A stretch of DNA of 63,708 nt, taken from positions 248,001 through 311,708 of the forward strand of contig NW_013657651.1 of the NCBI RefSeq assembly GCF_000142905.1, written 5' to 3'. Positions 38,161 through 61,900 of the stretch are shown here, piece by piece. The stretch comes from Thecamonas trahens ATCC 50062. Its lineage: Eukaryota; Protista; Apusomonadida. Both the position numbers and the translations under genes were made by a program. Numbering within the stretch: position 1 is the first letter of the stretch; each line of letters starts with the position of its first letter. The notes beneath the pieces were generated by a model that made no database searches, was not told where the DNA came from, and saw nothing but the letters and a program-made list of their open reading frames with translations.

Positions 38161-38619
38161 TAAAAATACACATCTGCACTGCAATGCAGCACCAACTGCA
38201 ACATGTATGGGGAAAGGGGACGGGATGAAGATCGGGCATGGGGGAGGGGGTTGGGAAAGGGAGAAAAAGGGGAAAAAAGGGAAATGTGACCTGCATGTCT
38301 CATCCTCGGCTCATACCTCCAGAGGAGGTCACCGACGTTTAGCATGGATGCGGGACCTGGGAGCCTCACCCTCCCAAGGGAGGGGGCTCACCAATGACGT
38401 TCGTCCATCAAGGGCGCTGCAGACGGGATACACACCATGGCGTAATGGTGCCCCGCGTCCGTCAAGGTCCTCCGCCAGCCACTGGGACTGGGGCCAACCA
38501 AGACTGCTGCCGCTGGGCATGGCCAAAAGACGTACCCGCCGAAGCGGTGCGGTCAATCGGCTGCAATGCTGCTCAGCACGCCCACACCGACTAACCATTG
38601 TCTCGGCCACTGGCGGCGA

Positions 38620-39759
38620 ATGGCCGAACGTACCCAGGCGAGGGCTTCCGCTCGCGAAATGGGTTTCACCGACTCGGCCCTGGTGGTGGGTTACATTGCA
38701 GCCAACACCACCGTTGTCGTCCTCTCCCGCTACATACGCAAGCACCACCCAGGCATACATACCAAGGAGGCCTCCATGTTCTATGTCGAGGCCATGAAGC
38801 TGGCATGTATGACCCTATACCTCGCCGTCGTTGCCGCGCCCGTCACTGCCCGTCTGCCACCCTCCCGCCTCACCCCACGCACCGCCGGCCATCTCCTCGG
38901 CCTTGCCACGCTGCCGGCACTGCTGTACGCTGCGCAGACGTGGCTTGCTTACTGGGCCATTGCCCGTCTCGACGCCGGCGTCTACGCCGCGTTCTCGGCG
39001 CTCAAGTTTGTGGCCGCCGCACTTGCCGCGGTCGTCCTCCGCGGCGCGCGCATCTCCCGCTCGCAACTCGCCGCCCTCGCCGCCGTCTGCTGTGGTCTGG
39101 CGCTGCTGCCGACTGCGCCCCGCGCCGCGAGCCCTGTCGCCGTATCCGGTCAGCTGGCGAGCACTTCGCTCTCGTCGGCTGTTGTCGCCGCCATGATCGC
39201 CATCGCCGCAGCGTCTGCGCTTGCTGGCGCTCTCACGGCGTCGCTCCTTCGCGGCGTAGCCGGGTCGTCGCCGCTGATGGCGCGTCTTGTCCCGCCGCAT
39301 GTCTCTGCCCTCCCGCAGGCGTACAAGTCGCTTGCACTTTATGCCGGCGGTACGGTTGTCTCGGGCGTTGTGTGGGCGCTGTCTCCGCCCGGCGCAGCGA
39401 CCCGTTCGGCCCCAGATCTGGTCCCGTGGGCGCTGGCGTGGCTCTCGCTTGTAGTCCTCGCCGCCAATGGCATTCTCATCTCGCTCCTCCTTGCCCGCAT
39501 TTCGATCGTCGCCAAGTCGATGGCCGGTGCCTTTTCCGTCTTTACCATCGCCACGGCCTCGTCGCTCCTCTACGCCGACCTCGGCCCGACCGCGCCTCGG
39601 CTCGCCACCTCTGGCATTCTCATTGCCATCGCCATCTACGTCTTTCACGCCTACCCCCCTGCCTGTCATTCTCACTGCGATGCTTCTGAGGTGACCGAGC
39701 TAGTCCCTGCCCCGCTCAACTCGGACTCCGTCCGTAAGCGGTCAATCAAGCGCGACTGA
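38620..39759 (+). CDS. Nucleotide-sugar transporter (SLC35A-like, divergent)
   Basis: Motifs VEAMKL, LPALLYAAQ...LDAGVYAAFSALK, ISRSQ, ANGILISLLL...IVAKS; about 10 TM segments. Confidence 0.8.
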   Translation: MAERTQARASAREMGFTDSALVVGYIAANTTVVVLSRYIRKHHPGIHTKEASMFYVEAMKLACMTLYLAVVAAPVTARLPPSRLTPRTAGHLLGLATLPALLYAAQTWLAYWAIARLDAGVYAAFSALKFVAAALAAVVLRGARISRSQLAALAAVCCGLALLPTAPRAASPVAVSGQLASTSLSSAVVAAMIAIAAASALAGALTASLLRGVAGSSPLMARLVPPHVSALPQAYKSLALYAGGTVVSGVVWALSPPGAATRSAPDLVPWALAWLSLVVLAANGILISLLLARISIVAKSMAGAFSVFTIATASSLLYADLGPTAPRLATSGILIAIAIYVFHAYPPACHSHCDASEVTELVPAPLNSDSVRKRSIKRD

Positions 39760-42574: not shown

Positions 42575-44593
42575 TGTACGGCGGGTGATAGTCGGCCGTC
42601 GCGAGCTCGGCCCGCTCCAACGCGTCGGCGACCTGCCACGACGCCAGCTCGGCCGCCACGTCGATGCCGTTGGCGGCAAAGAACTCGTGCTCGAGCACCT
42701 TGTCCAGCGTGATTCGCGTCACCGGGTCTGGATCGAGCATAGCCCGCAAGAGCGCGTACTGCGGCGCCGACGCCTCGTCAGCCGGCAGGGCGTCCATCCA
42801 CGAGTAGAACTCGGACCACGGTACCTCGCCCTTGTCCTCGAGATGGAAGAGGAGCTCGCCAAAGACCACGCCGGCGGCCCAGACGTCAACTGGCCAAGAG
42901 TAGCCGACAATACCATAGTTTTTGGCAAGGCCGTGGCGTGGCGGGTCGCCAGCGTCGCCTCCGGCGGCATCGGCCGCCTCCTCGGCCACCTTCTTGGCCG
43001 CCTTGTACGCCGCGTTGATGCCCTCCATCTCGGGCGCGAGGTGGCCCTCGGTTCCGGTCATCGACGTGTGCCCGATCGCCGGATCGTGGAACGTGGAGCA
43101 GTCAAAGTCCATGAGCGTTACACGGCCAGTCAACGGCTCGTAGAACAGGTTGTCGCGCTTAAAGTCACGGTAGATGATGCCCTTGCCGTGGACGTGCGCG
43201 AGCGCGCCGAGCGCGTCGACCATGTACCGCGCGATCTGCGGGAGCTCGAGACGCGTCACAGCCTCGGAGGTGTTGCGGAACTCCATGACAAGCGCGTACG
43301 TTCCGGTCTCGACGAGCGGAACCCAGTCGACGAGCTTGTTGATTCGCGGGTGGCCTTGCACCACGGCATGGACCCGGACGTCGCGCGGGACATCCTCGCC
43401 AACCGGCGGCCGCTCGTCGGGATCGTGGTCGAGCTGCGCAATCTTAATGGCCACCAGCGCACCGGTTGCCCTCTCGCGCGCCGAGTACACCACCAGCTGG
43501 CTTTCGAGATGGATGCGCTCAATAAAGTGGAACCGGTCGCCAAGCGCAAAGATGTTTGACTCGAACGGGAACTCGTCGTCGCCGTTGCGGAAGGCGACTT
43601 GTCGCGGGCGGTGTTCTTGCGGAGCCACCGCTGCTTGGCTACGATCTTGGATGCTGGATCAACAAGCTTGAAGAGCGACGCGGCCGCGTCCCAAGGTAGC
43701 GGCGGGGGGATACGCTGCGGCTTGAGAATGAGGCCGACCGAGCCGCCGAGCGGCTCGCGCGAGATGCGCACCGTCAGCGCGTCGCCGGTCTCCGACTCTT
43801 GGATTCCGATGGCATGCTTGCGGACCTCGCCACGCTCACCCCCACGCGCACTCGGCATCTTGCGGTACTGCACATGTATCTCGCCCGACGGGTGGAGCCG
43901 GACCTGGAACGACGCCGTCTCCACGCCGAGCGACTTGGCGCCGTACTGGGCCACGCGGTCAAACTGGACGAGCCACGAGGCGGTCAAGCCCGAGCCAAAG
44001 CTACGGACAAAGACCTTGCCCGCCAGCGACAAGTCCAGATCGCACCAGTACGGCGCAAGGACCGTCCCATGCATACGATATGCCGGGAGTGATTCGGGCG
44101 AGTGCGGGACCGAGGTCGGCGAGAAGCGGCCAAAGCCAAGCAGCCCGTTGGAGCCGATGGTGACCACTCCGTGCCAAGCTGAGTACACCGGAACAGCAAA
44201 CGGAAGCGCCATTGTCACACCGTCGTCATCACGGCCCATATTCAACTCCGTCGCATTGCTGTCTTTGCTCAGATCGACCCAGGCGTAGGCCTCGGGCGAG
44301 AAGGCGTCGACCACGTAGCCGGGGCCATCGCTCACCGGCATCTCCGCCTTGCATCTCCCCATCCAGCACGTGCCAACCGCATGGCTCGCCCTCGCACTCC
44401 TCGGCGCATCCAACAGCTCATCGTTCACATCCAACCCCGCCAGCTCGCCATCAAGAACACAGGCCGGCCCGTGGAGCGGCGCGCAGCTCGCCATTTCGGT
44501 GCAGCGGACGTCGGCCGGCTGGCACCCGGCAGCGGCTGCGCCTAGGGCAAGCGCTACAACGAGGGTGACCACAAGAGAGAGTGCTGGCAGCAT
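42564..44593 (-). CDS. Signal peptide + Cys-rich/NIDO-like domain fused to an atypical Ser/Thr kinase (junction by frameshift or intron near 43600)
   Basis: MLPALSLVVTLVVALALGAAAAG; ALPFAVPVY...IGSNGLLGF...LAPYWCDL...FQVRLHPSGEIHVQY; kinase motifs VAIK, YRDFKRDN, DFD, APE, DVWAAG. The kinase frame has an upstream TGA and no ATG before subdomain V. Confidence 0.7.
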
Positions 44594-44799
44594 GGTGCTG
44601 TGGGTCGTTGGAGGTGAGGTGTGGGGTGTGGGCAAGCGGGACGGAGTCAGTGAGCGGAGGGGGGGCTGACTCGACGCAAAGCGGCCGAATCGGTCGGCGG
44701 AGCGCCAGTCGACCAGATTGGGCATGGGCTGGGGATGAAGACGTCGACTTGTTGTGCGATGCTTGGCGTGTGGTGTCTGTGATTGTTATTTACATTTAC

Positions 44800-47700
44800 T
44801 TATGCCCATTCGACACTGCCGATGGGGCGGACGCGGTGCTGGGCGAGGCGATGGCTGACCCAGTTGCGGAGATCGTTGGCGAACCAGAACTGGCTGCCGT
44901 CGGACTTGTAGAGGAGCGGCTCGAGAGCTTCGAGGGTGAGGGCGGCAGAGGGCTTGAAGGTCTTGGCGTACCACCGCTCGAGCTCGGCGACCTGGACGTC
45001 CGAGTAGCCGGCCCGGGAGAGGCCAATAAAGTTGAGCGACTGCGAGGTACCCGACGGCGACGAGCCGCGCGAGGTAAAGGTGGTAAACGGCAGAACGTCG
45101 CGGACGACAGAGGTGCCAAGGCCGACCATGCAGTACGGGCCGATGGTGGAGAACTGGTGGACCTGCGAGTTGATGCCGACGTTGGCGTTGCGCATGACCC
45201 GGCAGTAGCCGCCAAACTGGACCGAGCACGTGACGGTCACGTTGTCCTCAATCACCATGTCGTGCGCAATGTGCGCGTAGTTCATAAAGTAGCACTTGTT
45301 GCCAATCTTGGTCACCGCCTCGTACTTGGGAGGCTCGCCCTCGGGCGCGTGGACGTTGACGTACTCGCGGAACACGTTCTCGTTGCCGATCACAATGCCG
45401 CCGGTCGGCGGCGTCCGCGTCACGTAGTCCTCGGGCCAGAGCCCCACCACGCAGTGCGACGAGAACTCGTTGCGCGATCCGACAACGACGTCAGGACCCA
45501 CAAAGTGGCAGAACGCCCCGACGTCGTTCTCCTCGCCAAACCGCACCCCAGACTCAATCTGCACGTGTGATCCAATCTTGGTACGCGCACCAATGACCGC
45601 ACCCGAGCGGATGATCGAGAACGCGCCCACAGAGACGCCAGCGCCAAGCACCGCGCCGTCCTCCACAATCGCCATCGGCGCAATCGTCACGCCCGGGCCC
45701 ACTCGGGCGCCCGGGCTCACCAAAGAGGTCGGCATCGGCTGCGCAGGCGCAGTCGTCACCGCAGCGCGCACCGGAGCGGCGTATGCCGCTGGCGCCGGCG
45801 CCGGCGGTGCCGCCGATGCATGAGCCGGCGCGGTGCCTGCCGGCGCCTGAACGCCCAGTGAGACCAGGTGACCAGCCATGGCTGCAATGTTCGGCTGCTC
45901 AAAGAGGACCATGCCGCTCAGCTCGACGCCAAAGGCCTCGTTGAGCCGGGTCCGGAGCGTGGCCGACGCCAGCGAGTCGACGCCCAGCTGCGCAAACGGC
46001 GCCTGCCGGTCAAAGCCGTACGGCCGGGCGGCACCCACAAGCTCGCCAACCACGTCCTCGACACGGGCCTCGACACCCGCCGTAGCCGGGGCAGCGACCG
46101 GAGCAGCGGTAGCAGCCGATGCCGCTGACGCGTGAGCCGGCGCGGCGACCGCCGCCGGCGCCTGCACGCCCAGTGAGACCAGGTGACCAGCCATGGCTGC
46201 AATGTTCGGCTGCTCAAAGAGGACCATGCCGCTCAGCTCGACGCCAAAGGCCTCGTTGAGCCGGGTCCGGAGCGTGGCCGACGCCAGCGAGTCGACGCCC
46301 AGCTGCGCAAACGGCGCCTGCCGGTCAAAGCCGTACGGCCGGGCGGCACCCACAAGCTCGCCAACCACGTCCTCGACACGGGCCTCGACACCCGCCGTAG
46401 CCGGGGCAGCGACCGGAGCAGCGGTAGCAGCCGATGCCGCTGACGCGTGAGCCGGCGCGGCGACCGCCGCCGGCGCCTGCACGCCCAGTGAGACCAGGTG
46501 ACCAGCCATGGCTGCAATGTTCGGCTGCTCAAAGAGGACCATGCCGCTCAGCTCGACGCCAAAGGCCTCGTTGAGCCGGGTCCGGAGCGTGGCCGACGCC
46601 AGCGAGTCGACGCCCAGCTGCGCAAACGGCGCCTGCCGGTCAAAGCCGTACGGCCGGGCGGCACCCACAAGCTCGCCAACCACGTCCTCGACACGGGCCT
46701 CAACACCTGCGACAGCCGGGGCAGCAACCGGAGCAGCGGCAGCAGCCGGGGCAGCGGCAGCGGCAGCGACCAGTTCGACCACCGTCGACGTTGACGGCGT
46801 CATCGACGACGCCGCAAACGCAGCCCAGTCGACCTCAAACATGCCGATCGATGATGCGGCGTTGTCGGCGGCCAACAGCTGGCCAAGGCCCATGAAAGCC
46901 TGAGTCGGGTCCAGGAAGCCGAAGCCCTGCGAGCGCCAGTAGCGCTCAAAGGCCGGGCCGAGCTCGGACGCCATGCCGTCATCGGCAAACGTGCACCAGT
47001 TGACGCTGAGCGCCGGCAGGCCGGCGCGGTGGCGGAAGGCAGCCAGGCCGTCGAGGTACGCGTTTGCTGCCGCGTAGTGGGTCAGCTGCGCGTAGCCAAG
47101 GACGGCGTAAACCGACGAGAAGAGAACAAAGGCGTCGAGCTCCAGAGCGAGCGCATCAGCCGCAGCATGCAGCGCCCATCCGCCAACAACCTTGGCGCTG
47201 AGGACGCGCTCGAACCGCGCCGGCTCCATGCCGACGGCAAAGCCGTCATCGAGGATGCCGGCAAGATGCAAGATGGCCGAGATCTTGACGCCTGCGGCGC
47301 GGGCCCCATCGCGGAGCGCGGTAAGACCAAAGACAACCTCCTCTGGCTTGGACACGTCACACTGCGCCAGCGAGAGAGTCACGCCCTGGCCGCCGAGCTC
47401 GGCGACGACGGCGGCGGCAGCACCGTCCAGCTCCTCCAGCGATGCCTTGGACCGCGAGAGAATGCCGATGCGCTTGACGCCAACCCGCGCCAGCCAGCGC
47501 AGGACATGGCGGCCGAGGCCGCCGAGGGCGCCGGTCACAACCACCATACCGGAGTCGGCGGCACCAAGTGCAGCGCAGACTGCGTCGGCGGCCACGCCGC
47601 CGGCAGGAACCTGGGCCCGGACAAGACGGGTGGCGTACACAGAGGTACCGCGGAGCGCAATCTCCATGACCTGTGTCACAGCGCCACCGACAACGCCATC

Positions 47701-50700
47701 AGCACCCAGGACCCGGCCGAGGACGCTGCCCTCAAACGCCACCTCACCGGCAGCGCCCGGGCAAAGATCGATGATACCGACCTTGGCCCACGAGCTCTGC
47801 TCGCGAGCGAGGACCCGGAAGAACGACCAGACGCACTGCTCAAGCGCGCCTTCGTGGCCGTCAGCAGGCGCGCCCGCCGGCGGTGCAACAGGAGCCGCGT
47901 TGCGGGTCAGGACTGCAACCGTGGCAATAGAGGCCAGTGCCGGCGTCGCCGCCACCGCCTGCACACCCGCAAGCACGTCGAGGAGCCAGGCTGACATGGC
48001 GACACCCGACGACGATGCCTTGGCCGGCGCCGGCGCAAAGATGACCGCCCACTTGCTGGCGTTTGCAGCAGAGCCGGCGGCCGCAGCTGCGTCGAGTGCG
48101 GCGCGGAGCGCGTTGTTGCCGCCCGAGAGTGGAACGGCCGCGCCCGAGCCGGGTGCCATGCTGGCGATGAGGGCCGAGCCGTAGGCGACGTCGTCGCCGA
48201 GGACAATGACAAAGGTGCCCGAGCCGGCAAGGCCCGCGCCGGTGACTGGGCCGATCGGGATGTACTGGGTCTCGTACACGTGGTCGGCGACGTAGGTCGA
48301 GGCCTCGACAAGGCGGGAAGGAGCGGTAGCGTCGCTGCGAGCTGCGCCGGCGCCGGCGGCCGACGGCTTGAGCTTGAACTTTTGGATCTTGCCCGAGGCG
48401 GTCATCGGGAGCTGGTCGGCAAACTCGTACACGACCGGGGCTTTGTAGCGGGCAAGGTTAGCAGCACAGAGTTCGCGGAGCGCGGCCTCGACGGCGACCT
48501 CCTGACCAAGCGCGTCCGGGTTGAGGACGATGATGGCCTTGACAATCTCCTCCATGACAGGGTCGGGCTGGGCGACGACCGCGGCCATGCGGACCTGCGG
48601 GGCGCGGTAGAGGATGTTCTCGACCTCTGCGCAGTACACGTTCTCACCGCCGGTAAGAATCATGTTCTTGGCGCGGTCGACGACTCGCAGGTAGCCGTGG
48701 TCGAGGGCGACGGCAAGGTCGCCAGTCTTGAAGTAGCCGTCCGAGGTAAAGGCCTCGGCGTTGGCGTCGGGCCGGTTCCAGTAGCCAGAGAAGACGGTCG
48801 GGCCGCGAATGTGGACCTCACCGACGGTCTTGCCGTCAGCCGGAACGGGAGCACCGGTCTCGGGATCAACAATGCGGACGTCCATGAGGAGGAACGGGCG
48901 ACCAGAGGTGGTGATGAACTCGGCGGCGCCGTCGCCGAGGGCGGCAACGGCTGGGGTGACGAGCGAGAACGAGATCTTGCCGCAGCACTCGGTCATACCG
49001 TACGAGATGAAAAAGGTGACCTGCTCGCCAAACCGCTCAAAGACGCGGCGAACCATTTCGGACGGGAGCGGCGAGCCGCCGCACGACATCAGCCGCATCG
49101 AGGTGAGGTCCAGCGGCTCGAGCATGGTTGCCGGCAGCGACATCATCATGGTCACCATGGTCGACGCAAAGTTGGTGATGGAAACTCGATGGTCCGAGAC
49201 GATGCCGAGCGCGCCAAGCGGGTCAAAGGTCCGCGAGATGATGTGCGTGCCACCAACCCAAGTGATGACGTAGATGGCAAAGGCATCGACAAGATGGAAC
49301 ATGGGCGCAAAGTGGCCCCATACGTCGCGGCCGGTGATGGAGAACTCGGCGGCAGCGCCGAGTGCATGCATGGTCACAATCTTGTTGGAGAGGACCACGC
49401 CCTTGGGGAAGCCGGTCGTGCCCGAGGTGTAGTACATCTGGTAGCCGTCTGACGGCGAGGCGGGGCCGACCGGGAGCGCGAGCGGCGCAAAGCCTGACAA
49501 GGTTCCGGCCACCATCTGGGTGTAGGTGTACTCGGCGACCGTGAACGGGGCGCCGCGGGTGAGCGGCAGGCTGAGGGCGGCGTCCTCGGCCTCGGACGGC
49601 GAGACCCAGACGATGCCACCAAGCGAGAGCGCTGCCTGGGCGCCGTCCCAGTGGCCGCCGGCGAGGATGTCGGCGACAACCGGAGCGTACTCGCTGTCCA
49701 CCACCAGCCAGTGCGGCGAGGCGTCGCCAAGAATGAAACCGTGCTCAGCGGCGACAAGGCCGGTGTTGAGGTTGAGGACGACCGAGCGGAGGCCAGCCGC
49801 GGCAAAGTGGAGCTCGTAGACAACAGCCGAGTTGCGGCACAGGACGCCGATGCGGACCTGGCGGAGCGCGGTAGCGCCGCCGGACGACGCTGCCGCGAGC
49901 GACGACGCAATGTTGCGGACGCGGTCATAGACCTGGCCGTAGGTGTGCTCGGTGCCACGGGTGACGTCACGGACGCCGACGGTGGACGAGCCGAGCGCGA
50001 CGGCACGCTCGAGCATGTCCCACGGGTCGACACCGGCAGGCATGATGTCCTCGGAAGCCGGAGGCGGGGTCGGGGTCGGTGGCGAGCGGGCCGGCACAGG
50101 AAGACTCGCAGACGCAGGCGCGGGCGTGGGCGAGCCAGACACGGCCTGATCAACCATGGGCGAAAAGGCGGCAGTGCGGGCGCGCGACGAGAGCACGCCA
50201 CGCGAAAAGTGGGTCATGGTCGAGTAGTCGACCTCGACCTCGAGGAGCATCGAGGTGGAGGCCGCGGCGGCCGCGGCGGCAGCAGCGGAGAGGCCGGCGG
50301 TGGTGTCGACGTGGGCATAGCCAAGGCCAAAGGCCTTGGCCAGGGCAGCGAGGTTGTACTTGGGCAGGACAGTGCAGAACGGAGTCCGGCCCACAAACCG
50401 CTGGAGGCCGGACATCATGCCGAGCTCGTGGTCGCGGAGGACAACGACGGTGACCGGAAGCGGAGCGTTGACAAGGGTCGCCATCTCAAGGCCGGTCATG
50501 AGAAAAGCGCCGTCTCCAACCAGCGCAACGGCGTGGGTGTTGGTAGGCGCGGCGCCGGCGCCGAGGGCAGCCGGCACGCAGTAGCCCATGGACGAGTAGT
50601 CTGTGGGCGAGAGGATGCGGGTGGGCGCGTCGAGGACAAGGTGCTCCATGGCGAGCACAGTGCCGTTGCCCGAGTCGGTGACGTAGACGGTGGTCTGAGA

Positions 50701-53329
50701 CGGGAAGGCGGTCTGGAGCGCGGCGAAGAGTGCAGCGGGAGGAAGGGCGGTGACGCCCGACGCCGACGCGGTCCGCTCGCTCATCTCGGGCGCCGAGAGG
50801 GCCGGCCAGAGGGTGGCGCGGGCGGTGGCGAGGCGCGGATGAATCGACGACTGGGCGGTGGCGAGGCAGGCGGCGCGAACGCCGGCGGCAGCACGCGACT
50901 CGAGCTCGGCGACGAGGGCAGCGACGAGGGCCGAGGAGTCGGCCCGGACAGGAACGGCGTCCATGTGGGCACCGGGCACGGCCGGGTTGATGTCCACATG
51001 AAAAGTGACCCGCTTCGGCGCGGTCCGGTAGTGGGCCGAGGCCATTTCGGACATGCGGGCGCCGAGAATGACGACAACATCGACAGGCTCGACAAACTCG
51101 CGGAGGACCGACGGAACCTGGGCGCCAAAGCCCGGCCAAACAAAGCCGGGGCTCGACTCGGGGTACACACCCTTGCCAGAAAAGGTCGAGGTGAAGAGGG
51201 CACCGGTGAGGCGGCCGAGGGCAAGAAGGGCTGCGGGCTCGACGCCCGCAGCGCCGAGACCGACGTGGAAGAGCGGCGGGTAGGCTGAGTTGAGAAGGGC
51301 AGCGGCAATGCCTCGGATCTGGGCAGCGGTAATGGGCGGCGGAGCGAGCTCAAGACCAGCCGGCAGGGCGAGCCCGGCGGCGGCGTCGGGCACGAGCTGC
51401 GCGCCCGAAGCTACCGAGAGCGGGACCGAGACAAAGACCGGACCGGGCGTGCCCGAGACGGCGAGAGCGGCAGCTGAGGCGAGGGTGCGGACAAGGCTGT
51501 GCGGGTGCTCGACGGCAAGCGCGCCCTTGGAGATGGGCGCGGCGACGGCGGCGTACCAGCTGGCAACACGGGCCTCGTGGGGGGCTGGAGCGTCGGCCTC
51601 AAGCGAGACAACCACGAGCGGGGCGTTGTCCATGTGCGCCTCGCCGACGCCGGAGAAGACAGCCGGGAGGACGTCAACGCTCGGCGCGACGAGGGCGACG
51701 CCGACGGCCTGGCACCGCTGCGAGCGAGCATAGCCGTCAAGCATGAAGCCGGCCGACTGGTTGTCGGTGACGGCGCGGACGTCGAGGCCGGCAGCGGTGG
51801 CTGGCGCCTTCCAGCCGAAGCCTGCCCATGCATGGGTGACAAAGGCGAGGGCGGGACCCGGCGAGTCACTCATGGCAGCGAGGGCAGCAAAGAGGGTGTC
51901 AAGCGCCGGGAGGTCAAGAGCAGCCGGGAGCGGAGTGGCGAGAGCCGGCTCGGTCAGCTCGACAATGACGACCGAGCCCGCAGAGGCGGCCAGGGCAGCG
52001 GCGTCGGCGAGCGAAGCACCGACAGCAAAGCGGGCCGAGACGCCTTCGGCAAAGGCGGCCAGGTCGACGGCCGGCGGGGCGGAACCGTTGGCCAGCGGCG
52101 CGGTGCGTGGAAGGACGGCGACGACAAGCGGCGCGTTGGCGGCAGCGGCGGTGACCAGCTCCATGCCAGTGGCGAGCAGGTCGTCACGCGAGGTGACGAC
52201 GCAGGTCGGAGCCTTGGCGGCGGCGTCGGAGCCATAGGCGGCGCGCCAGAGAGCGGCGCCGATGCCGGTGCAGAGCGTGCCGGGGCTCTCGATGACAAGC
52301 GTCGACGTGCCCTCAAGGAGGCACGACTGGACGCCGGCGGAGGCGGTGGCCGGAGTGAGCGACGGAAGGACGATGACGCCAAACGGCGCGAGGTCGGTGG
52401 GCACGGCGGAAGCAAGAGCTTGGAGCTCCGCGGCTGGGCGCGAGGCAAGCACCGGGTATGCCCCGTAGGCAGCAGCAAGGTCTACGGCGGCAGCGGCAAT
52501 GGCGGCGTCGAGGGCAGCGGCGTCGCAGGCATGCATCGAGTTGAGCATGTCCGAGGGGATTTCGACCGCGACCGGGCCCGGGGCGCCGCCGGCAGCCGGC
52601 GACGGGTCCATGGCCAGCTTTGCGGCATGGAGCAAAAGCTTGGGAATGGCCTCACCTGAGGCAGGCGCGAAGACGTCCTTGACCATGGGGCGGAGAAGGG
52701 CCTGGTTGTCGACATCGTGGAGCTGATAGGCGTCCGAAGCAACAGCCGAGTTCGAGGGCGATCGGCGAGCACCTGTGGTGACCACCAGCATGGGCGCTGA
52801 GGCCAGAGCAGCAGCAGCGATACCAGGCAGGGCATGGGTGATGCCCGGACCGCCGATGATGTTGACAACAGGGAGCGCTGGAGCACCGGCAGCCACCGAT
52901 GCGGCCCATGCGCCATTTGCCATGAAACCGGCCGACTCTTCGTTGCCGATGAGGGCGATGGACGGAGAGGCCTCCGTCAGCGACGCCAGAGCCTCATACA
53001 TCTACAGAAACCAGACCATATCATGCAAGTGAGTCTTCCCGAGGTGTAGTGCGTGGTACAGAGTGGTCGGCATCGGTGTGCGGCTTGCTGTAGCCATGGG
53101 AAGGCGGCAGGAAACGAAGCAAAAGGTGCGTAACATCCGCCACAAGCCGTCCAGGCCACCATACCTCCAGTGGCCAGGGGGACAGAGAAGGAGCATGACG
53201 GGAGAGGGAGAATAAACGGCTTCGTACCTTGAGGTTCTGGACACCAGGAATGCCCATGACAAGCGAGGCTCCCGCAGCCTCCATGCCGAGGGCCACCAGG
53301 GCGTCCCCGCGCTTGGTCGACGTGCTCAT
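44800..53329 (-). CDS. KS-less megasynthase (~2,767 aa): tandem ThDP/acetolactate-synthase-like region, adenylation domain, ketoreductase, ACP x3, LpxA-like acyltransferase
   Basis: Exon 1 53228-53329 (…MGIPGVQNLK); intron 53002-53227 (GTACGA...TGTAG, phase 0); then a 2733-codon ORF. Motifs: NEESAGFMA, GSMG-like YSSMGYCVPAALG, GDGAFLMTGLE; YTSGTTGFPKG, YGMTE, TGDL, GKIQK; TGALGGLG, LDD, YAAAN; GVDSL x3; hexapeptide repeats, AHIAHD, VHQF. Confidence 0.92.
45851..46701. repeat. 315-bp tandem repeat (2.7 copies) encoding three ACP domains
   Basis: Blocks starting at 45851, 46166 and 46481 look identical; Ser codons of the DSL motif lie at 45973, 46288 and 46603. Confidence 0.93.
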
Positions 53330-53400
53330 TCTCCCAAGTGATGTGGCAGTCGTTGAGGCGGGTGGAGAGGGGAGGGGGGGGGGGGGAGGGGTTCGGCCGG

Positions 53401-54702
53401 CTAGGCAAGCGCAGAGGCTGGGGCGGGATCGTCAAAGAGCGAGTCGGTGCGGTTGGCCGGCGGGGTGACGACAACAAGGAGCGAGTCGGCAGAGATGCCG
53501 GCAAGGCGATCGAGCGAATCGATCGATGTGCCGCCGATGTCGAGGACCGAGAGCGTAGGCCGTGGTGGGACGCGCTCGATGCCGGGACAGCCCGAGACGT
53601 CGAGGACAGAGACATGGAGCGAGGCCAGCCCGGCCGAGGTGATGCTGGTGCAGCACGAGGCATACAGCGCACGAAGCTCCGTGAGTGGCGCGAGGGCGGC
53701 AAGAACCGCATCGTCGGCGGCGGTGTGCGATATGTCGAGTTCGGTGAGCGAGGTCAGCGCGCCGAGCATAGCCAGTGCCGGCGGAGTGAGGCTGGCGCAG
53801 TGCGCGAGTGAGAGCGATGTCAAATGTGAACAGCCAGCGATGACGGCGGCAAGGACGTCGTCGGTGGCACCCAAACACGCGTCGAGGTGCAGCTCGGTGA
53901 GCGCAGGCGCGGCCGAAATGACCGCCACGAGTGCAGCGGACTGCAGGCCAACATCACCCGCGTCAAAGACATCAAGCTGTGGCATCGACAGATGTCCGAG
54001 CAGCGGAGCGCCGGTCAGTTGTGGCGAGACGCAGCCGCGGAGCACCAGATCCTTGACCCCGGCAGCAAGACCGTTGTGTGCAAGGATGACTCCGAGCGCC
54101 GCGTCGGTGAGCAGCTCGGTCTGCGACAGATCCACCGCGGCCCACTCGGACTGGGCGCACGCCAGCAGCTTGGCCACCGCCACAAGCTTGGGCGCATCGT
54201 CAGGATCGTCCTCATCGCCCCAAACCAGCTCTTCCAGCGCCGGGCAGCCGACAACAACACTCGCGATGCCGACCATGGTCACACTGGGACACCCACCGAC
54301 GTTGAGCACCTTGAGCCCCGGTGCGATGACCGGAAGCTTGGCCAGCAGCGCGTCGTCGATAGCACGAACGACCGAGACGTTAAGCTCGACGAGACGAGTA
54401 AGGGCAGCAATGCCAGCCGTCAGTGCGTCGGAGGTGACCCACGACGAGCACCAAGAGAGGGAGAGGGAGTGCAGATCAGGGGCGGCAGTAGCAATGTGCG
54501 GCAGGAGCTCGTCCGCGTCGATGGCCTCTGTCTCGTCGAGCACCAGTCCTCCCAGAGCATCACACGCAGTTATCCATGCCATCAGCTCAGTCGAGGTCAA
54601 ACTCGCCTTGACATCATCTCCCACCACCATGGTCCCGCAGGCAGGAACTTGGCCCACTTGTTCGGCGCACGCCACTTCCACCCGGTGTGCGGCAGTGGAC
54701 AT
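53401..54702 (-). CDS. Leucine-rich repeat protein (RNI/FBXL/AMN1-like)
   Basis: Repeated LxxLxLxxCxxxTD units (LHSLSLSWC, LKVLNVGGC, LTSLSLAHC, LTELDISHT). Confidence 0.85.
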   Translation of the reverse strand: MSTAAHRVEVACAEQVGQVPACGTMVVGDDVKASLTSTELMAWITACDALGGLVLDETEAIDADELLPHIATAAPDLHSLSLSWCSSWVTSDALTAGIAALTRLVELNVSVVRAIDDALLAKLPVIAPGLKVLNVGGCPSVTMVGIASVVVGCPALEELVWGDEDDPDDAPKLVAVAKLLACAQSEWAAVDLSQTELLTDAALGVILAHNGLAAGVKDLVLRGCVSPQLTGAPLLGHLSMPQLDVFDAGDVGLQSAALVAVISAAPALTELHLDACLGATDDVLAAVIAGCSHLTSLSLAHCASLTPPALAMLGALTSLTELDISHTAADDAVLAALAPLTELRALYASCCTSITSAGLASLHVSVLDVSGCPGIERVPPRPTLSVLDIGGTSIDSLDRLAGISADSLLVVVTPPANRTDSLFDDPAPASALA

Positions 54703-54947: not shown

Positions 54948-55461
54948 NNNNNNNNNNNNNNNNNNNNNNNNNNNNNNNNNNNNNNNNNNNNNNNNNNNNN
55001 NNNNNNNNNNNNNNNNNNNNNNNNNNNNNNNNNNNNNNNNNNNNNNNNNNNNNNNNNNNNNNNNNNNNNNNNNNNNNNNNNNNNNNNNNNNNNNNNNNNN
55101 NNNNNNNNNNNNNNNNNNNNNNNNNNNNNNNNNNNNNNNNNNNNNNNNNNNNNNNNNNNNNNNNNNNNNNNNNNNNNNNNNNNNNNNNNNNNNNNNNNNN
55201 NNNNNNNNNNNNNNNNNNNNNNNNNNNNNNNNNNNNNNNNNNNNNNNNNNNNNNNNNNNNNNNNNNNNNNNNNNNNNNNNNNNNNNNNNNNNNNNNNNNN
55301 NNNNNNNNNNNNNNNNNNNNNNNNNNNNNNNNNNNNNNNNNNNNNNNNNNNNNNNNNNNNNNNNNNNNNNNNNNNNNNNNNNNNNNNNNNNNNNNNNNNN
55401 NNNNNNNNNNNNNNNNNNNNNNNNNNNNNNNNNNNNNNNNNNNNNNNNNNNNNNNNNNNNN
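54948..55461. other. Assembly gap (N run)
   Basis: Run of n bases. Confidence 1.
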
Positions 55462-58929: not shown

Positions 58930-61900
58930 TTAGAACAGAGCGTTGGTGGCCTTGAGCTCGCAGCACTGGTTGAGCGCGTTGGACTTGACGTCGGTGACGT
59001 AGTAGCCGACGCGCTCAAACTGGAGATGCTTCTCGGGCACCTTGAGGTCGTTGAGGACGACGGGCGGCACGTAGCCGACGAGGTCGACACGCGAGTTCTC
59101 GTTGACGTCGGCGCGCCAGTCTGGGGCGGCGGCGACGTTCTCGGACTTGAAGAGCACCCCGTAGTTGCGGACGGCAACCTGGGCCGGCGGTGTGGTGGGC
59201 GACACCCATCCGACCCAGTGGATGGCCTTGGGCTTCTTGGACTTGCCGGTCAGGGTCGACTCGTCAGTGACGATTTCGACGGTGACCGAAGTAACGTTGC
59301 CGGCGGCGTCGACATCGTTGGCGACGGCACGGACGACAGGGCCGTAGCGGAGGCGGACGACCTTGCCCGGAGCAAGGCCAAAGTACTTCTTCGAGTCGTT
59401 GAGGCGGAAGTCGCGGGCCTCGATGTAGATCTTGCCCGCAGCAAACGAGGCCGGGTAGGTCATGGCGGCCTCCGGCGTGCCCTCGGCGGCATTGGGGAAG
59501 CTTGCGGCAGCGACGGTCTGAGCAGCGGGGGCGACGGCGTCGACGTTGGCGATGATGACCTCCAGCGGGTCAAGGACCACCATGCGCCGCTCGGCAATGT
59601 TGCCAAGATCCTCGCGGAGGCAGTGCTCGAGGAGCTCGTAGCGGACCAGGTTCTCGGTCCGGGTCACGCCGACAAGGTCAACAAACTTGTTGATGGCGGC
59701 CGGGGTGTAGCCGCGGCGGCGCAGGCCGGAGAGGGTCGGCATGCGCGGGTCGTCCCAGCCGTCGACAAAGCCGTCCTCGACGAGGGCGCGCAGCTTGCGC
59801 TTGGAGACGACGACGTGGGTGATGTTAAGCCGCGAGTACTCCCACACGACCGGGCGGTAGATGCCGAGAGCCTTGAGGAGCCAGTGGTACGACTCGCGGC
59901 GGAGGCCAAACTCGAGGGTGCAGAGCGAGTGGGTGATGTTCTCGAGTGCGTCGACGATGCAGTGCTCAAAGTCGTAGGACGGGTAGACACACCATGCGTC
60001 GCCAGCCATCGGGTGCTCGTGGAACTTGACGCGGTAGGCGATGAGGTCGCGCATGCACGGGTTGTCGCTCTGCATGTCCATCTTCAGCCGCAGCGTGGCC
60101 TCGCCCTCGCCGATCTTGCCCTTGCGCATGTCGCGGAAGAGCTTGAGCGACTCGGCCGCCGGGCGGTCGCGCCACGGCGAGTTGGTCCGCTTCTGCCGCG
60201 ACTCGACAATTTCGGCCTTGTTCTGGTGGCACACGTATGCGTGGCCGGAGAGAATGAGCTGCTCGGCATACGCGTACATCTGCTCAAAGTAGTCCGATGC
60301 CTTGGTCACCGCCACCGGCTCGTGGCCGAGCCACGCCACGGCCTCGCGGATGGCCTTGTAGTACTCGGGCTTCTCGGCCTCGGGGTTGGTGTCGTCGTAC
60401 CGCAGGTAGCAGATGCCGCCCTTGGCCTTGGCGTAGCCAAAGTTGAGGCCCATCGACTTGGCGTGTCCGATGTGCGGGAAGCCGTTCGGCTCGGGAGGGA
60501 ACCGGGTCACCACCTTGCCGCCCGTCGTCGCCAGATGCTCCGCAAGCAGCTTGGGATCGTCCTGCTCGTTCTCTTCGGGCGCGGAGAACACAATCTTCTC
60601 GGCAGTCGTCTCGGCAACCTCAGCAGCGGCCGACGCGCCGGCCTCGTTACCCTTGCCCTTGCCCTTGCCCTTGCCGCCCTTGCCCTTGCCCTTGCCCTTG
60701 CCGCCCTTGACCGGTGCCGCCGGCGGAGGGCCGTCGTCAAACGCGGTCCGTGGGCCGAGCGTCTCGGCGATCTTGGCGTCAAGGATGTTCTTCACCCGCG
60801 CCCCATCCACAAACGGCAGCGAGCGCGTCGTCTGGCCCAGCAGCTTGCCGGTCTTCATGTGGTACCGCATCCGCTGCAGTTCCTCGGCGTGCGCCTCGAG
60901 CGTCTTGGCCACCGCCGCGCCGATCTGCTCGTCGGTGTACGAGACGCCGACGCCAGACGCCTTTTCAAACGCCGCCACGTCGAGCTCGGCCACCGGCACG
61001 TTCTTGTTCTTCTTCAGCCACTTGGTGGCAGCTGCAAACTGCGGCTTGCGAATCCGCTCATCGGCCACGTATCCGGCCAGGAACGGCAGGTGGATGTCCG
61101 CCACGTGCTTCGGCGCCACCGCCGCCACCTCGTACAGCATGTTGCACGCCGATGGCGTTGCCGGAGTTCCAACCTGGAGGCAGCAATGACGAGAGAGGAA
61201 AGGGAAAGAGAGAGTGTGTGTGAGTGAGTAAGTTTGAGCGGAAGCACCGACGACGACGGCGATGATGCAATGTGGATGGCCATAATCACGACGACGATGA
61301 GCACGAGCACGAGCACGAGCACGACGACCGACAACCGACGGCGACGATGACAAGCACAATGGTGACGGCGACAGCGACGGCGACAAGCATGACGGCAACG
61401 GCGACGGCGACGGCGCCAAGCACGACAGCAAGAAGACCGCAGCGAACGACCAACAACAGCGAGGCCCAACGACGAGCAACGACGAGCCACGATGAGCCAC
61501 GACGAGCCACGACGAGCAACGACGAGCCCCCTTCCCCCCCTTGCCCCTCCCATCAGCGCCACACACACCCTTACTCCCTTTCGTACCATGNNNNNNNNNN
61601 NNNNNNNNNNNNNNNNNNNNNNNNNNNNNNNNNNNNNNNNNNNNNNNNNNNNNNNNNNNNNNNNNNNNNNNNNNNNNNNNNNNNNNNNNNNNNNNNNNNN
61701 NNNNNNNNNNNNNNNNNNNNNNNNNNNNNNNNNNNNNNNNNNNNNNNNNNNNNNNNNNNNNNNNNNNNNNNNNNNNNNNNNNNNTCCCCCCCCTCAGTCC
61801 CATGATAATTGCACCATGGACAATGCATGGCACAGGGCATCCACACTGCCCACCCCCTCCCCTCCCCCCTCCCCCTCCCCTTCCCCCATAGTCATCCACA

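What the first reader, a model, noticed from the sequence alone, without database searches (positions are those of the whole stretch)
44800..53329. KS-less eukaryotic assembly line: ThDP carboligase + A + KR + 3 ACP + LpxA-like acyltransferase in one polypeptide
Seen: one ORF plus a short first exon encodes, in order, an acetolactate-synthase-like ThDP region (~53329-50180), an adenylation domain (~50030-48370), a PKS-type KR (~48290-46830), three ACPs (46700-45855) and an LpxA-like beta-helix (~45735-44800). I see no KS, AT, condensation or thioesterase motif. A canonical spliceosomal intron splits the ThDP N-terminal motif (GIPGVQNLK|MYEAL) and the flanking genes are eukaryotic, which argues against bacterial contamination. 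Established: ALS-type enzymes make 2-hydroxy-3-oxo (beta-keto) acids; PKS KRs reduce beta-ketoacyl-ACP; LpxA transfers (R)-3-hydroxyacyl groups from ACP to UDP-GlcNAc. Inference: the ThDP module replaces the ketosynthase as the C-C bond-forming step. Its beta-keto acid product is adenylated, loaded on ACP, reduced to a (di)hydroxyacyl group, and transferred to a nucleotide sugar or other acceptor. That would be a self-contained route to an acylated sugar or glycoconjugate. I know of no described enzyme with this architecture.
Basis: partly seen in the sequence, partly recalled or inferred. Interest (0 to 1): 0.96.

Follow-up and report, generated by a model that had tools for sequence, protein, structure and literature searches.

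The report
Thiamine-primed, ketosynthase-free acyl assembly line
A marine protist gene, spliced and transcribed, joins a thiamine-dependent carbon-carbon bond-forming enzyme to an acid-activating domain, a ketoreductase, three carrier domains and a lipid-A-type acyltransferase; no paper I could search describes this layout, although uncharacterised relatives exist in algae and a myxobacterium.

Summary
One minus-strand gene (exon 1 53329-53228, intron 53227-53002, exon 2 53001-44803; 2767 codons) encodes these domains in order:
- a tandem ALS-like ThDP unit
- a CoA-ligase-type adenylation domain
- a complete B-type PKS ketoreductase
- three ACPs
- an LpxA-like acyltransferase

There is no room for a KS, AT, C or TE domain. 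An RNA contig shows the intron spliced out. RNA contigs identical to the DNA cross the ThDP/A and A/KR junctions. The flanking genes are eukaryotic, and codon GC3 is native in every domain.

The same N-terminal module occurs in seven other proteins: Chromera, Cymbomonas, Corallococcus and metagenomes. One of them, P0001, has the whole architecture and the same intron site. In three relatives the module feeds a ketosynthase, so it is a portable starter module and not simply a KS replacement.

Most likely mechanism (inferred, about 0.45): the carboligase makes a labile 2-hydroxy-3-oxo acid. This is adenylated, loaded on ACP, reduced to a (3R)-2,3-dihydroxyacyl thioester, and transferred to a hydroxyl acceptor. 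The acceptor is unknown.

The genome, Thecamonas trahens according to earlier scan notes, also has a separate canonical LpxA, LpxC, LpxB and an LpxD-like gene. I found no paper describing this architecture. The scan noted sub-parts of this gene before, on this same DNA.

The parts
53228..53329 (-). Exon 1: 34 codons, from the start codon to ...GIPGVQNLK. It encodes the first strand and helix of the first ThDP PYR domain.
   Evidence: Sequence read. It matches the N-terminal consensus GIPGxHNxELYDAL of the family alignment. The RNA joint 53001->53228 is.
53002..53227 (-). Spliceosomal intron, 226 nt, GT..AG.
   Evidence: It is skipped in a contig of RNA run X1. The homologue contig L001 begins inside an intron that ends ...ccacag|ATGTATGAG, the same codon position.
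52537..53001 (-). PYR1: rest of the first ThDP pyrimidine-binding domain, ORF aa 1-155. The catalytic Glu is kept (E21 in NEES).
   Evidence: Pfam TPP_enzyme_N 7.7e-9. phmmer alignment to BbmA, HEEG versus NEES. The Glu is conserved in all seven long homologues.
51922..52356 (-). PP1: degenerate diphosphate-binding domain, ORF aa 216-360. It has S-R-D where GDG should be, and there is no middle domain before it.
   Evidence: Weak phmmer alignment to the BbmA PP domain. Our PP2 hits the equivalent stretch of P0121, residues 288-331, at 3.6e-5. No homologue has GDG here. The model shows alternating strands and helices at pLDDT 65-75.
51382..51816 (-). PYR2: second PYR domain, ORF aa 396-540. The catalytic Glu is replaced (D-N-Q for H-E-Q, N414).
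   Evidence: phmmer alignment to E. coli ALS I 6lpi. The family alignment shows the Glu lost in 5 of 8 members and kept in P0123, P0139 and P0153.
50902..51321 (-). ThDP middle domain (TPP_enzyme_M), ORF aa 561-700.
   Evidence: Pfam 2.7e-15. It lies within the AHAS-fold match at Z 39.4.
50182..50691 (-). PP2: intact diphosphate-binding domain, ORF aa 771-940, with G829-D830-G831 and D857 (family motif L-R-D in place of NN).
   Evidence: Pfam TPP_enzyme_C 2.4e-25. Alignment. G829, D830 and D857 are nearly invariant in the 29-sequence alignment.
48352..50028 (-). Adenylation domain of acyl-CoA-ligase (ANL) type, ORF aa 992-1550. Motifs YTSGTTGFPKG, YGMTE, TGD and SGKIQK are all present.
   Evidence: Pfam AMP-binding 2e-59 plus AMP-binding_C 1e-15. 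NCBIfam PRK06187 scores 359 bits, below its cut-off of 476. Best PDB matches are feruloyl/fatty-acyl-CoA synthetase 8wev at 5e-60 and ttLC-FACS 1ult.
46822..48306 (-). PKS-type ketoreductase with structural and catalytic subdomains, ORF aa 1566-2060. It is B-type, with L1917-D1918-D1919 and catalytic Y1976.
   Evidence: Pfam KR 9e-46. Best PDB match is DEBS KR1 at 1.5e-35, with LDD, K, S and Y aligned. The keto-acid NRPS module 6ulw scores only 9e-7.
45847..46716 (-). Three ACP domains, ORF aa 2096-2175, 2201-2280 and 2306-2385, each with GVDSL (S2133, S2238, S2343). They are encoded by a 315-bp tandem repeat.
   Evidence: Pfam PP-binding x3. TRF reports period 315, 3.0 copies, 97% matches.
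44803..45711 (-). LpxA-like left-handed beta-helix O-acyltransferase, ORF aa 2431-2733. H2577 and H2580 correspond to E. coli H122 and H125. It has one extra coil, Y2599 for H144 and L2628 for the G173 'ruler'. The stop codon is at 44800-44802.
   Evidence: NCBIfam LpxA models score 188.5 and 171.8 bits, below their cut-offs of 226 and 231. PDB Burkholderia LpxA 4eqy at 6e-30. Alignment with E. coli LpxA. The C-terminus is colinear with that of P0001.

Best explanation
This is a real, expressed, cytosolic megasynthase of a heterotrophic marine protist. It builds and hands over a short hydroxylated acyl group without any ketosynthase.

**Step 1, inferred.** The N-terminal ThDP unit is a single-chain pseudo-dimer. 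Its one conserved active site is formed by PYR1 (Glu kept) and PP2 (GDG...D kept). It acts as an acetolactate-synthase-type carboligase: it decarboxylates a 2-oxo acid and adds the resulting carbanion to a second carbonyl compound. The product is a 2-hydroxy-3-oxo acid, which is chemically labile.

**Step 2, inferred.** The fused CoA-ligase-type adenylation domain captures that acid, adenylates it and loads it on one of the three ACPs.

**Step 3, inferred from motifs.** The B-type PKS ketoreductase reduces the 3-oxo group to a (3R)-hydroxyl. This gives a 2,3-dihydroxyacyl-S-ACP.

**Step 4, inferred.** The LpxA-derived domain keeps the catalytic His and the oxyanion Gly but has a narrowed chain pocket and an altered acceptor site. 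It transfers the acyl group from ACP to a hydroxyl of an acceptor. The acceptor may be a nucleotide sugar but is unknown.

In relatives, the same ThDP-A-KR-ACP unit serves as the loading module of type I polyketide synthases.
For: **The gene is real**
- The intron is spliced in an RNA contig, and 100%-identical RNA contigs cross the ThDP/A linker (50040-50197) and the A/KR junction (48235-48437, 48273-48553, 48222-48372) in runs of two studies.
- The flanks encode UTP6, SGT1, LETM1 and a cytosolic 5'-nucleotidase.
- GC3 is 0.78-0.86 in all five regions, against 0.84-0.87 in the neighbours.
- P0001, 39% identical, has the whole architecture and the same intron site.

**The module recurs**
- P0121, P0122, P0123, P0139, P0146 and P0153 share ThDPx2-A(-KR)-ACP at 31-55% identity per domain.
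- They come from Chromera velia, Cymbomonas tetramitiformis, Corallococcus sicarius and metagenomes.

**ThDP chemistry**
- Model residues 363-940 match the AHAS fold at Z 39.4, rmsd 2.9 A over 539 aa.
- The best family model is biosynthetic ALS.
- BbmA, titled 'ThDP-dependent HKA synthase', is the best sequence match of the first unit (7e-9). It ranks third for the second unit, after E. coli ALS I and plant AHAS (5.6e-25).
- The PYR1 Glu is conserved in all seven long homologues, and the PP2 GDG...D in six of them; P0153 has GEEE.
- A standalone relative, P0138, is fused to a PanE/ApbA keto-acid reductase. This is an independent link between this ThDP clade and a following keto reduction.

**KR**
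- It matches beta-keto-reducing PKS KRs at 1e-35, with the LDD motif, far better than the alpha-keto-acid NRPS KR 6ulw at 9e-7.

**Release**
- The equivalents of H122, H125, G143, H160, Q161, N198 and R204 are kept.
- G173 is replaced by Leu, Gln or Met in the clade, which fits a short chain.
- Other family members end in other acyltransferase-type domains (a different hexapeptide domain in P0139, a weak PapA_C match in P0122) or in a KS.

**Cofactor supply**
- The genome has three stand-alone PPTase-like genes.
Against: - No step has been tested biochemically.
- Nothing in the sequence shows that the A domain takes the ThDP product. Its closest solved relatives activate fatty, feruloyl, malonyl or succinylbenzoyl acids, and it falls below every curated equivalog cut-off.
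- The ThDP unit scores far below the ALS cut-off: 151 bits for the second unit alone and 191 for the whole ORF, against 538. Its donor, its acceptor and even the choice between carboligation and plain decarboxylation cannot be read from sequence.
- Several LpxA residues that hold UDP-GlcNAc are changed (K76V, H144Y, E200I, R205A), so a nucleotide-sugar acceptor is a guess.
- The identity of PP1 rests on weak alignments.
- The ThDP model has only moderate confidence (pLDDT 68.7), and its first ~70 residues are poor because exon 1 was not joined.
- The ACP copy number lies in a 315-bp repeat that I did not check with reads.
Confidence: 0.45

Rival explanations
1. The two halves work on different substrates. 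The A domain loads an acid taken from metabolism, for instance a 3-oxo or ordinary fatty acid. The ThDP unit acts elsewhere. It could be a YerE-like enzyme that adds a two-carbon branch to a keto sugar nucleotide that then serves as the acyl acceptor, or it could act on the acyl-ACP itself.
For: - The closest solved relatives of the A domain are fatty-acyl, feruloyl and malonyl CoA ligases.
- YerE-like ThDP enzymes of the same superfamily modify nucleotide-activated keto sugars (PMC12247030, read).
- JanthE, a YerE-like enzyme, is among the structural matches at Z 36.7.
- The terminal domain derives from an enzyme that acts on a nucleotide sugar.
Against: - The ThDP unit travels with A-KR-ACP and not with the LpxA-like domain. 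In P0153, P0146 and P0121 it precedes a KS, and in P0122 and P0123 there is no LpxA-like domain at all.
- Free 3-oxo acids are unstable and are not a usual metabolite pool (general knowledge).
- An ordinary fatty acid would leave the KR without a substrate.
Confidence: 0.2
2. The protein follows depsipeptide-type logic. The A domain loads a 2-oxo acid directly and the KR reduces it to a 2-hydroxyacyl-ACP, as in A-KR-T modules of cereulide- or valinomycin-type synthetases. The ThDP unit only tunes the 2-oxo-acid pool or is regulatory.
For: - A-KR-carrier is a known module for keto-acid incorporation.
- Streptomyces A-KR-T-C proteins appear among the full-length hits (P0035, P0039, P0108).
- The 6ulw keto-acid module is a detectable KR relative.
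Against: - The KR matches beta-keto PKS KRs about 28 orders of magnitude better than 6ulw.
- The A domain is of CoA-ligase type, not the amino-acid/keto-acid NRPS type.
- This reading gives the conserved ThDP active site no job.
Confidence: 0.12
3. The product feeds the organism's own lipid-A-like pathway. The terminal domain still acylates UDP-GlcNAc at O-3, with an unusual short dihydroxyacyl group, and LpxC, LpxD and LpxB process the product. This is a special case of the best explanation, with the acceptor fixed.
For: - The genome has a canonical LpxA (243 bits, above the cut-off), LpxC, LpxB and an LpxD-like gene.
- The catalytic and several sugar-nucleotide residues of LpxA are kept.
- A nucleotide-sugar-transporter-like gene lies 5 kb away, at 38566-39756.
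Against: - A canonical LpxA already exists, and the megasynthase domain is only 28% identical to it.
- It falls below both LpxA cut-offs and has lost K76, H144, E200 and R205.
- Gene proximity means little in a eukaryote.
Confidence: 0.12
4. Artefact: a chimeric assembly, bacterial contamination or a dead fusion gene.
For: - The 315-bp ACP repeat could be mis-assembled in copy number.
- High GC content gives long chance ORFs.
Against: - The intron is spliced in RNA, and RNA contigs cross the domain junctions.
- There is a colinear homologue with the same intron site.
- Seven homologues share the module.
- GC3 is native in every domain, and the flanks are eukaryotic.
- All catalytic motifs are intact.
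Confidence: 0.02

Closest known systems
Acetohydroxyacid/acetolactate synthase catalytic subunit and alpha-hydroxy-beta-keto-acid (HKA) synthases such as BbmA (PDB 8x3x) and the carbazole enzyme NzsH
   Same: - PYR-M-PP fold (Z 39.4).
- Catalytic Glu and a GDG Mg-ThDP motif.
- Expected product class: 2-hydroxy-3-oxo acids. PMC7466098 surfaced as a hit for this term in ThDP-dependent carbazole biosynthesis; the paper was not opened.
   Different: - This is a single chain of two units with complementary decay: PYR1 live with PP1 dead, PYR2 dead with PP2 live. The known enzymes are homodimers.
- Unit 1 has no recognisable middle domain.
- The second Asn of the NN motif is Asp, family-wide.
- It scores far below the ALS cut-off (151 bits for unit 2 alone, 191 for the whole ORF, against 538).
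- It is fused to an assembly line.
A-KR-carrier loading or depsipeptide modules and acyl-ligase loading modules of type I PKS/FAS
   Same: - An adenylating domain loads a carrier protein.
- A PKS-type KR acts on the tethered acyl group.
- Tandem ACPs.
- In relatives, hand-over to a KS.
   Different: - The acid is probably made in situ by a fused ThDP enzyme.
- The A domain is of CoA-ligase type.
- The KR is a beta-keto B-type KR.
- In this protein no KS, AT, C or TE follows.
LpxA, acyl-ACP:UDP-GlcNAc 3-O-acyltransferase
   Same: - Left-handed beta-helix plus a helical C-domain.
- Equivalents of H122, H125, G143, H160, Q161, N198 and R204.
- Takes a (3R)-hydroxyacyl group from ACP, which is what a B-type KR would deliver.
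   Different: - It is fused to its acyl donor.
- About 20 extra residues, one additional coil.
- K76V, H144Y, G173L, E200I, R205A and a 4-residue insert at the H191 position.
- A distinct C-terminal tail.
- Below both curated LpxA cut-offs.
- The organism has a separate canonical LpxA.
PapA5-type off-loading of PKS products by direct esterification
   Same: The logic of release: the acyl group goes from a synthase-bound carrier to a hydroxyl acceptor without hydrolysis. The Corallococcus homologue has a weak PapA_C match in this position.
   Different: A different fold: condensation-domain superfamily versus beta-helix.
C7-hydroxyacid synthase route to necic acids of pyrrolizidine alkaloids (from my own knowledge, not checked here)
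   Same: An AHAS-derived carboligase, then reduction of the keto group to a 2,3-dihydroxy-2-alkyl acid, then esterification to an alcohol.
   Different: That route uses separate free enzymes, free-acid intermediates and plant plastid enzymes, with no carrier protein.

Membership tests
Biosynthetic acetolactate synthase large subunit (TIGR00118) | Whole-protein score above the curated cut-off of 538 bits | tested here: not met
   151.3 bits for ORF aa 401-1000 and 191.4 for the whole ORF.
Biosynthetic acetolactate synthase large subunit (TIGR00118) | PYR-M-PP three-domain fold | tested here: met
   Model residues 363-940 match A. thaliana AHAS 7tzz at Z 39.4, rmsd 2.9 A, 539 aligned. Unit 1 lacks a recognisable M domain.
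ThDP-dependent decarboxylase/carboligase superfamily | Catalytic Glu in PYR, and GDG-X(24-27)-N(N) in PP | tested here: met
   The Glu is in PYR1 (E21), and GDG plus D857 are in PP2. PYR2 has Asn and PP1 has S-R-D. One complete site can form only by pairing PYR1 with PP2, which is inferred.
ThDP-dependent decarboxylase/carboligase superfamily | ThDP- and Mg-dependent C-C bond formation | not testable with these tools
   This needs an enzyme assay.
ANL adenylate-forming enzymes (acyl-CoA ligase branch) | Core motifs A3 (P-loop), A5, A7, A8 and the A10 Lys, with both subdomains | tested here: met
   YTSGTTGFPKG, YGMTE, TGD, DRAKNMILTGGENVY and SGKIQK. Pfam 2e-59 and 1e-15. No NCBIfam equivalog cut-off is reached; the best is PRK06187 at 359 against 476.
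Type I PKS ketoreductase, B-type | Structural plus catalytic subdomains, NADPH motif, Lys-Ser-Tyr, and an LDD motif | tested here: met
   Alignment to DEBS KR1 at 1.5e-35. Aligned are VVVTGALGGLG, SAKV, FSS, HYAAANAY and ILDDG.
Acyl carrier protein domain | Four-helix domain with the DSL serine | tested here: met
   PP-binding x3. GVDSL at 2130, 2235 and 2340. Phosphopantetheinylation was not tested, but PPTase genes are present.
LpxA (TIGR01852 / NF003657) | Score above the curated cut-offs of 231 and 226 bits | tested here: not met
   171.8 and 188.5 bits. The genome's other LpxA gene scores 243.3.
LpxA (TIGR01852 / NF003657) | Catalytic His125 with His122, the Gly143 oxyanion hole and His160 | tested here: met
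   Alignment with E. coli LpxA.
LpxA (TIGR01852 / NF003657) | UDP-GlcNAc contact residues K76, H144, E200 and R205, and a small 'ruler' residue (G173) for C14 | tested here: not met
   V, Y, I, A and L at these positions. P0001, P0283 and P0284 also differ from E. coli at all five, with similar but not always identical residues. The residue roles are from my knowledge of the E. coli structure.
LpxA (TIGR01852 / NF003657) | Homotrimer with active sites between subunits | not tested
Type I polyketide synthase / fatty acid synthase | Ketosynthase and acyltransferase domains | tested here: not met
   No ketoacyl-synt, Acyl_transf_1, Condensation or Thioesterase hit at E<=0.01, and no unassigned stretch is long enough. 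KS genes exist elsewhere in the genome.

The most novel reading that the evidence does not exclude
A widespread but uncharacterised starter module consists of a single-chain pseudo-dimeric ThDP carboligase fused to A, KR and ACP. It makes 2,3-dihydroxyacyl thioesters by thiamine chemistry instead of Claisen condensation. It feeds polyketide synthases in algae and bacteria. In Thecamonas it is off-loaded by an LpxA-derived transferase onto a sugar (nucleotide) acceptor. That would give a new class of acylated glycoconjugate, or an unusual lipid-A-like molecule, in a eukaryote.
Probability: 0.35. Interest if true: 0.9.

Novelty: new variant of a known kind. Interest (0 to 1): 0.8.

Why it matters
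Carrier-protein assembly lines are known to form carbon-carbon bonds with ketosynthases. A fused ThDP carboligase as the bond-forming or priming step, and an LpxA-type beta-helix as the release domain, would add two new part types to that toolbox.

The module recurs in an apusomonad, a chromerid, a prasinophyte, a myxobacterium and several metagenomic organisms. It therefore marks an unrecognised route to hydroxylated starter units for polyketides and lipids.

The single-chain pseudo-dimer is a clean natural example of how an obligate-dimer cofactor enzyme can be made independent of oligomeric state, and so usable inside a megasynthase.

It also adds to the open question of what lipid-A-type enzymes do in eukaryotes.

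Tried and rejected
**Literature**
- Nine full-text searches were run. One further attempt failed on a term that was too short.
- None found a paper describing a ThDP + A + KR + ACP (+ LpxA) protein, BbmA/CsmA by name, or Thecamonas LpxA.
- The library lacks most subscription journals, so this is weak evidence of absence.

- Complex prediction, to test whether the LpxA-like domain trimerises, was not available.
- The protein-atlas search on the unassigned stretch aa 120-400 could not run because the machine was busy.

**Tests that were inconclusive**
- hhalign of the aa 101-400 family alignment against standalone relatives confirmed only the end of PYR1 with confidence. It did not settle the identity of PP1, which therefore rests.
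- Names and neighbourhoods of the closest standalone ThDP relatives gave no known pathway. They are only translationally coupled to a GMC oxidoreductase.
- The Chromera C-terminal 500 residues have no significant family hit.

**Read joints treated as noise**
- Two odd joints in the RNA contigs were set aside: 50436->52138 with 27 foreign letters, and 51707->51214. They are non-canonical, they appeared at the 90% threshold in metagenomes, and they probably come from other organisms.

The fold used ORF residues 1-1000 only.
- I did not lay reads on the ACP repeat.

Full report
**1. What is in the sequence**

The minus strand carries an uninterrupted 2733-codon ORF from 53001 to 44803, with its stop at 44802-44800. 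Upstream, an ATG at 53329 opens 34 codons that end in ...GIPGVQNLK at 53228. A 226-nt GT..AG intron follows (53227-53002), and the ORF resumes with MYEAL. The exon 1 peptide fits the N-terminal consensus of the family, GIPGxHNxELYDAL.

Pfam and NCBIfam place the domains as follows, in ORF residues:

| Domain | Residues | Score |
|---|---|---|
| TPP_enzyme_N | 6-91 | 7.7e-9 |
| TPP_enzyme_N, second and weak | 405-471 | 4e-4 |
| TPP_enzyme_M | 566-696 | 1e-14 |
| TPP_enzyme_C | 776-922 | 3e-24 |
| AMP-binding | 1014-1408 | 2e-59 |
| AMP-binding_C | 1459-1538 | 1e-15 |
| KR | 1818-2006 | 9e-46 |
| PP-binding, three copies | | 4e-39 |
| Hexapeptide plus LpxA domain 2 | 2437-2694 | |

No KS, AT, condensation or thioesterase family appears. 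The remaining stretches are accounted for. Residues 1566-1817 are the KR structural subdomain. Residues 216-360 are a decayed ThDP PP domain. The rest are Ala/Pro-rich linkers of 60 residues or fewer.

**2. The gene is real, eukaryotic and expressed**

- A contig of RNA run X1 joins 53001 to 53228, exactly removing the predicted intron (ends CT..AC on the + strand).
- RNA contigs identical to the DNA lie along the ThDP, A and KR regions. They bridge the ThDP/A linker (50040-50197) and the A/KR junction (48235-48437, 48273-48553, 48222-48372). They come from runs of two studies, one labelled subsurface and one marine.
- These are assembled contigs, so they show presence and splicing. They do not show expression level or a single full-length transcript.
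- The neighbours encode UTP6, SGT1, LETM1, a cytosolic 5'-nucleotidase, an LRR protein and a nucleotide-sugar-transporter-like protein.
- GC3 is 0.78-0.86 in each of the five regions, against 0.84-0.87 in the neighbours.
- Earlier follow-up notes of this scan name the genome Thecamonas trahens. I did not verify the name independently.

**3. The ThDP region is a single-chain pseudo-dimer**

- Alignments to solved enzymes show that the first PYR domain keeps the cofactor-activating Glu: NEES against HEEG of BbmA.
- The stretch that aligns with a PP domain in the first unit has S-R-D in place of G-D-G.
- The second PYR domain has D-N-Q in place of H-E-Q.
- The second PP domain keeps G-D-G and has L-R-D where ALS has L-N-N.
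- Across the seven long homologues, the PYR1 Glu is always kept and PP1 never has GDG. PP2 keeps GDGA and the Asp in all but P0153. The PYR2 Glu is lost in five of the eight family members (this protein, P0001, P0121, P0122 and P0146) and kept in three.
- G829, D830 and D857 are nearly invariant in a 29-sequence alignment.
- Because ThDP sites form between a PYR and a PP domain of different units, one conserved site (PYR1 + PP2) is expected within one chain. This is inference.
- An AlphaFold model of ORF residues 1-1000 has pLDDT 68.7 and pTM 0.71. It is poor in the first ~70 residues, as expected without exon 1. Its residues 363-940 match A. thaliana AHAS at Z 39.4, rmsd 2.9 A over 539 residues.
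- In the same list BbmA is titled 'ThDP-dependent HKA synthase'. BbmA is the best sequence match of the first unit (7e-9). For the second unit it ranks third, after E. coli ALS I and plant AHAS.
- The unit is ALS-like but not an ALS: 151-191 bits against a cut-off of 538.
- Its nearest standalone relatives, about 40% identical, share family motifs such as TDSGNGT, DYSSMGY and VLRDxELG. They are themselves unnamed and below all cut-offs.

**4. The other domains**

*Adenylation domain.* It has all ANL core motifs. It is closest to feruloyl/fatty-acyl-CoA synthetases (8wev 5e-60, 1ult 5e-57), so its substrate cannot be read from sequence.

*Ketoreductase.* It aligns over both subdomains with DEBS KR1 (1.5e-35). 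The NADPH motif, Lys, Ser, Tyr and the LDD motif of B-type KRs all align. The keto-acid NRPS module 6ulw scores only 9e-7. From established PKS knowledge, B-type KRs give (3R)-hydroxyacyl products.

*ACPs.* The three carry GVDSL and come from a 315-bp repeat with 3.0 copies at 97% matches. They are not nucleotide-perfect, and the copy number is unverified by reads.

*LpxA-like domain.*
- It matches LpxA structures (4eqy 6e-30) but stays below both curated LpxA cut-offs.
- Aligned with E. coli LpxA, it keeps D74, H99, H122, H125, G143, H160, Q161, N198 and R204.
- It has V for K76, Y for H144, L for G173, I for E200 and A for R205.
- It also has one extra coil, a 4-residue insert at the H191 position and a distinct tail.
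- P0001, P0283 and P0284 (the last an ACP + beta-helix transcript from MMETSP) share the extra coil and tail and also differ from E. coli at these five positions, with similar but not always identical residues.
- The genome has a separate canonical LpxA (243 bits, above the cut-off), only 28% identical to this domain. It also has LpxC, LpxB and an LpxD-like gene.

**5. It belongs to a family, and that changes the reading**

A search of 1.8 billion representatives with the ThDP region, followed by domain scans and source look-ups, gave these relatives:

| Protein | Length (aa) | Source | Architecture |
|---|---|---|---|
| P0001 | 2343 | metagenome | Identical architecture with one ACP, same intron site |
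| P0139 | 2178 | not named | ThDP-A-KR-ACP plus a different hexapeptide transferase |
| P0123 | 3003 | Chromera velia | ThDP-A-KR-ACP plus 500 unassigned residues |
| P0122 | 2003 | Corallococcus sicarius | ThDP-A-ACP plus a weak PapA_C-type acyltransferase match |
| P0153 | 2779 | Cymbomonas tetramitiformis | ThDP-A-KR-ACPx2-KS |
| P0146 | 4144 | not named | ThDP-A-KR-ACP-KS-DH-ER-KR-ACP-KS |
| P0121 | 5021 | metagenome | ThDP-A-KR-KS... |

P0122 lies beside KS-KS, DH and PPTase genes. The ThDP-A-KR-ACP block is therefore a portable starter module. It is either extended by ketosynthases or, as in this protein, released at once by an acyltransferase. One standalone relative, P0138, is an ALS-like enzyme fused to a PanE/ApbA keto-acid reductase. 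That is an independent sign that this ThDP clade makes a keto compound which is then reduced.

**6. Most likely mechanism (confidence about 0.45)**

What is shown is the domain content, the intact motifs, the domain order and its conservation. Everything below is inferred.

1. The carboligase makes a 2-hydroxy-3-oxo acid.
2. The fused A domain captures this labile acid and loads it on an ACP.
3. The B-type KR makes the (3R)-alcohol.
4. The LpxA-derived domain moves the 2,3-dihydroxyacyl group to a hydroxyl acceptor. Its ancestor is specific for (3R)-hydroxyacyl-ACP, and its ruler position is now bulky.

The instability of beta-keto acids gives a rationale for the fusion. The pseudo-dimer makes the ThDP site independent of how the rest of the protein oligomerises.

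The main rivals are:
- independent substrates for the ThDP unit and the A domain, including a YerE-like action on a keto sugar (0.2);
- alpha-keto-acid loading as in depsipeptide modules (0.12);
- a link to the organism's own lipid-A-type pathway, which is the best explanation with the acceptor fixed (0.12);
- artefact (0.02).

**7. Known or new**

Each domain belongs to a known superfamily, and carrier-protein assembly lines are a known kind. I found no description of an ALS-like ThDP unit inside such a line, or of an LpxA-type release domain, in the searchable literature. Homologues sit in databases as hypothetical proteins. I therefore class it as a new variant of a known kind. They cover the pseudo-dimer, the LpxA ruler, the A-KR junction and the ACP repeat.

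**8. Limits**

- There is no biochemical evidence.
- The substrates and the acceptor are unknown.
- The PP1 assignment is weak.
- The ACP copy number is unchecked.
- The organism name is taken from earlier notes.
- Complex prediction and the Atlas search could not be used.

Noticed in passing
G000:C25:260719-261381 (L006), C11:62982-63887, C12:368682-369710, C4:661286-661921: The same genome carries a canonical LpxA (243 bits, above the cut-off), single LpxC and LpxB genes and an LpxD-like gene. A heterotrophic protist thus has the first four steps of a lipid-A-type pathway (LpxA, LpxC, LpxD, LpxB), separate from the megasynthase.
   Followed up: partly
L004:6499-9773 and L005:726-4000; also the place of P0275: The closest standalone relatives of the ThDP unit (about 40% identity) overlap by 4 bases with an upstream GMC oxidoreductase gene in three unrelated contigs. 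This looks like a conserved two-gene unit of unknown function.
   Followed up: no
P0138 (925 aa, Logan contig): An ALS-like ThDP enzyme of the same clade is fused to a PanE/ApbA ketopantoate-reductase-type domain.
   Followed up: no
L002:1-16144 (Corallococcus sicarius RAWG01000051.1): The bacterial ThDPx2-A-ACP homologue ends a gene row of KS-KS, KS-KS-DH, PPTase and DH proteins. This is a PUFA/PKS-like cluster that could serve as a tractable model for the starter module.
   Followed up: no
window 53316-53512: Summed RNA contig depth is about 200 in runs X1 and X2, just upstream of the start codon and over a C/T-rich tract. It is probably cross-mapping of low-complexity sequence, not expression.
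   Followed up: no
window 50436->52138 and 51707->51214: RNA contigs show non-canonical joints with 22-27 foreign letters between the two sides, at the 90% likeness threshold. They probably come from related sequences of other organisms in the metagenomes.
   Followed up: no
window 20887-21610, 54948-55461, 61591-61784: Runs of N (gaps or withheld sequence) explain the apparent low-GC windows in the composition profile.
   Followed up: yes
window 43259-44725 (minus strand): A 489-codon ORF directly downstream of the megasynthase has no Pfam hit. I did not examine it.
   Followed up: no
G000:C21:314926-317018: A PPTase-like ORF lies next to a 2218-codon ORF with a KS domain. This looks like a second carrier-protein synthase locus in the genome.
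   Followed up: no
window 38566-39756 (plus strand): A nucleotide-sugar-transporter-like gene (Pfam Nuc_sug_transp, 1.2e-11) lies 5 kb from the LpxA-like end of the megasynthase. The proximity is suggestive only.
   Followed up: partly
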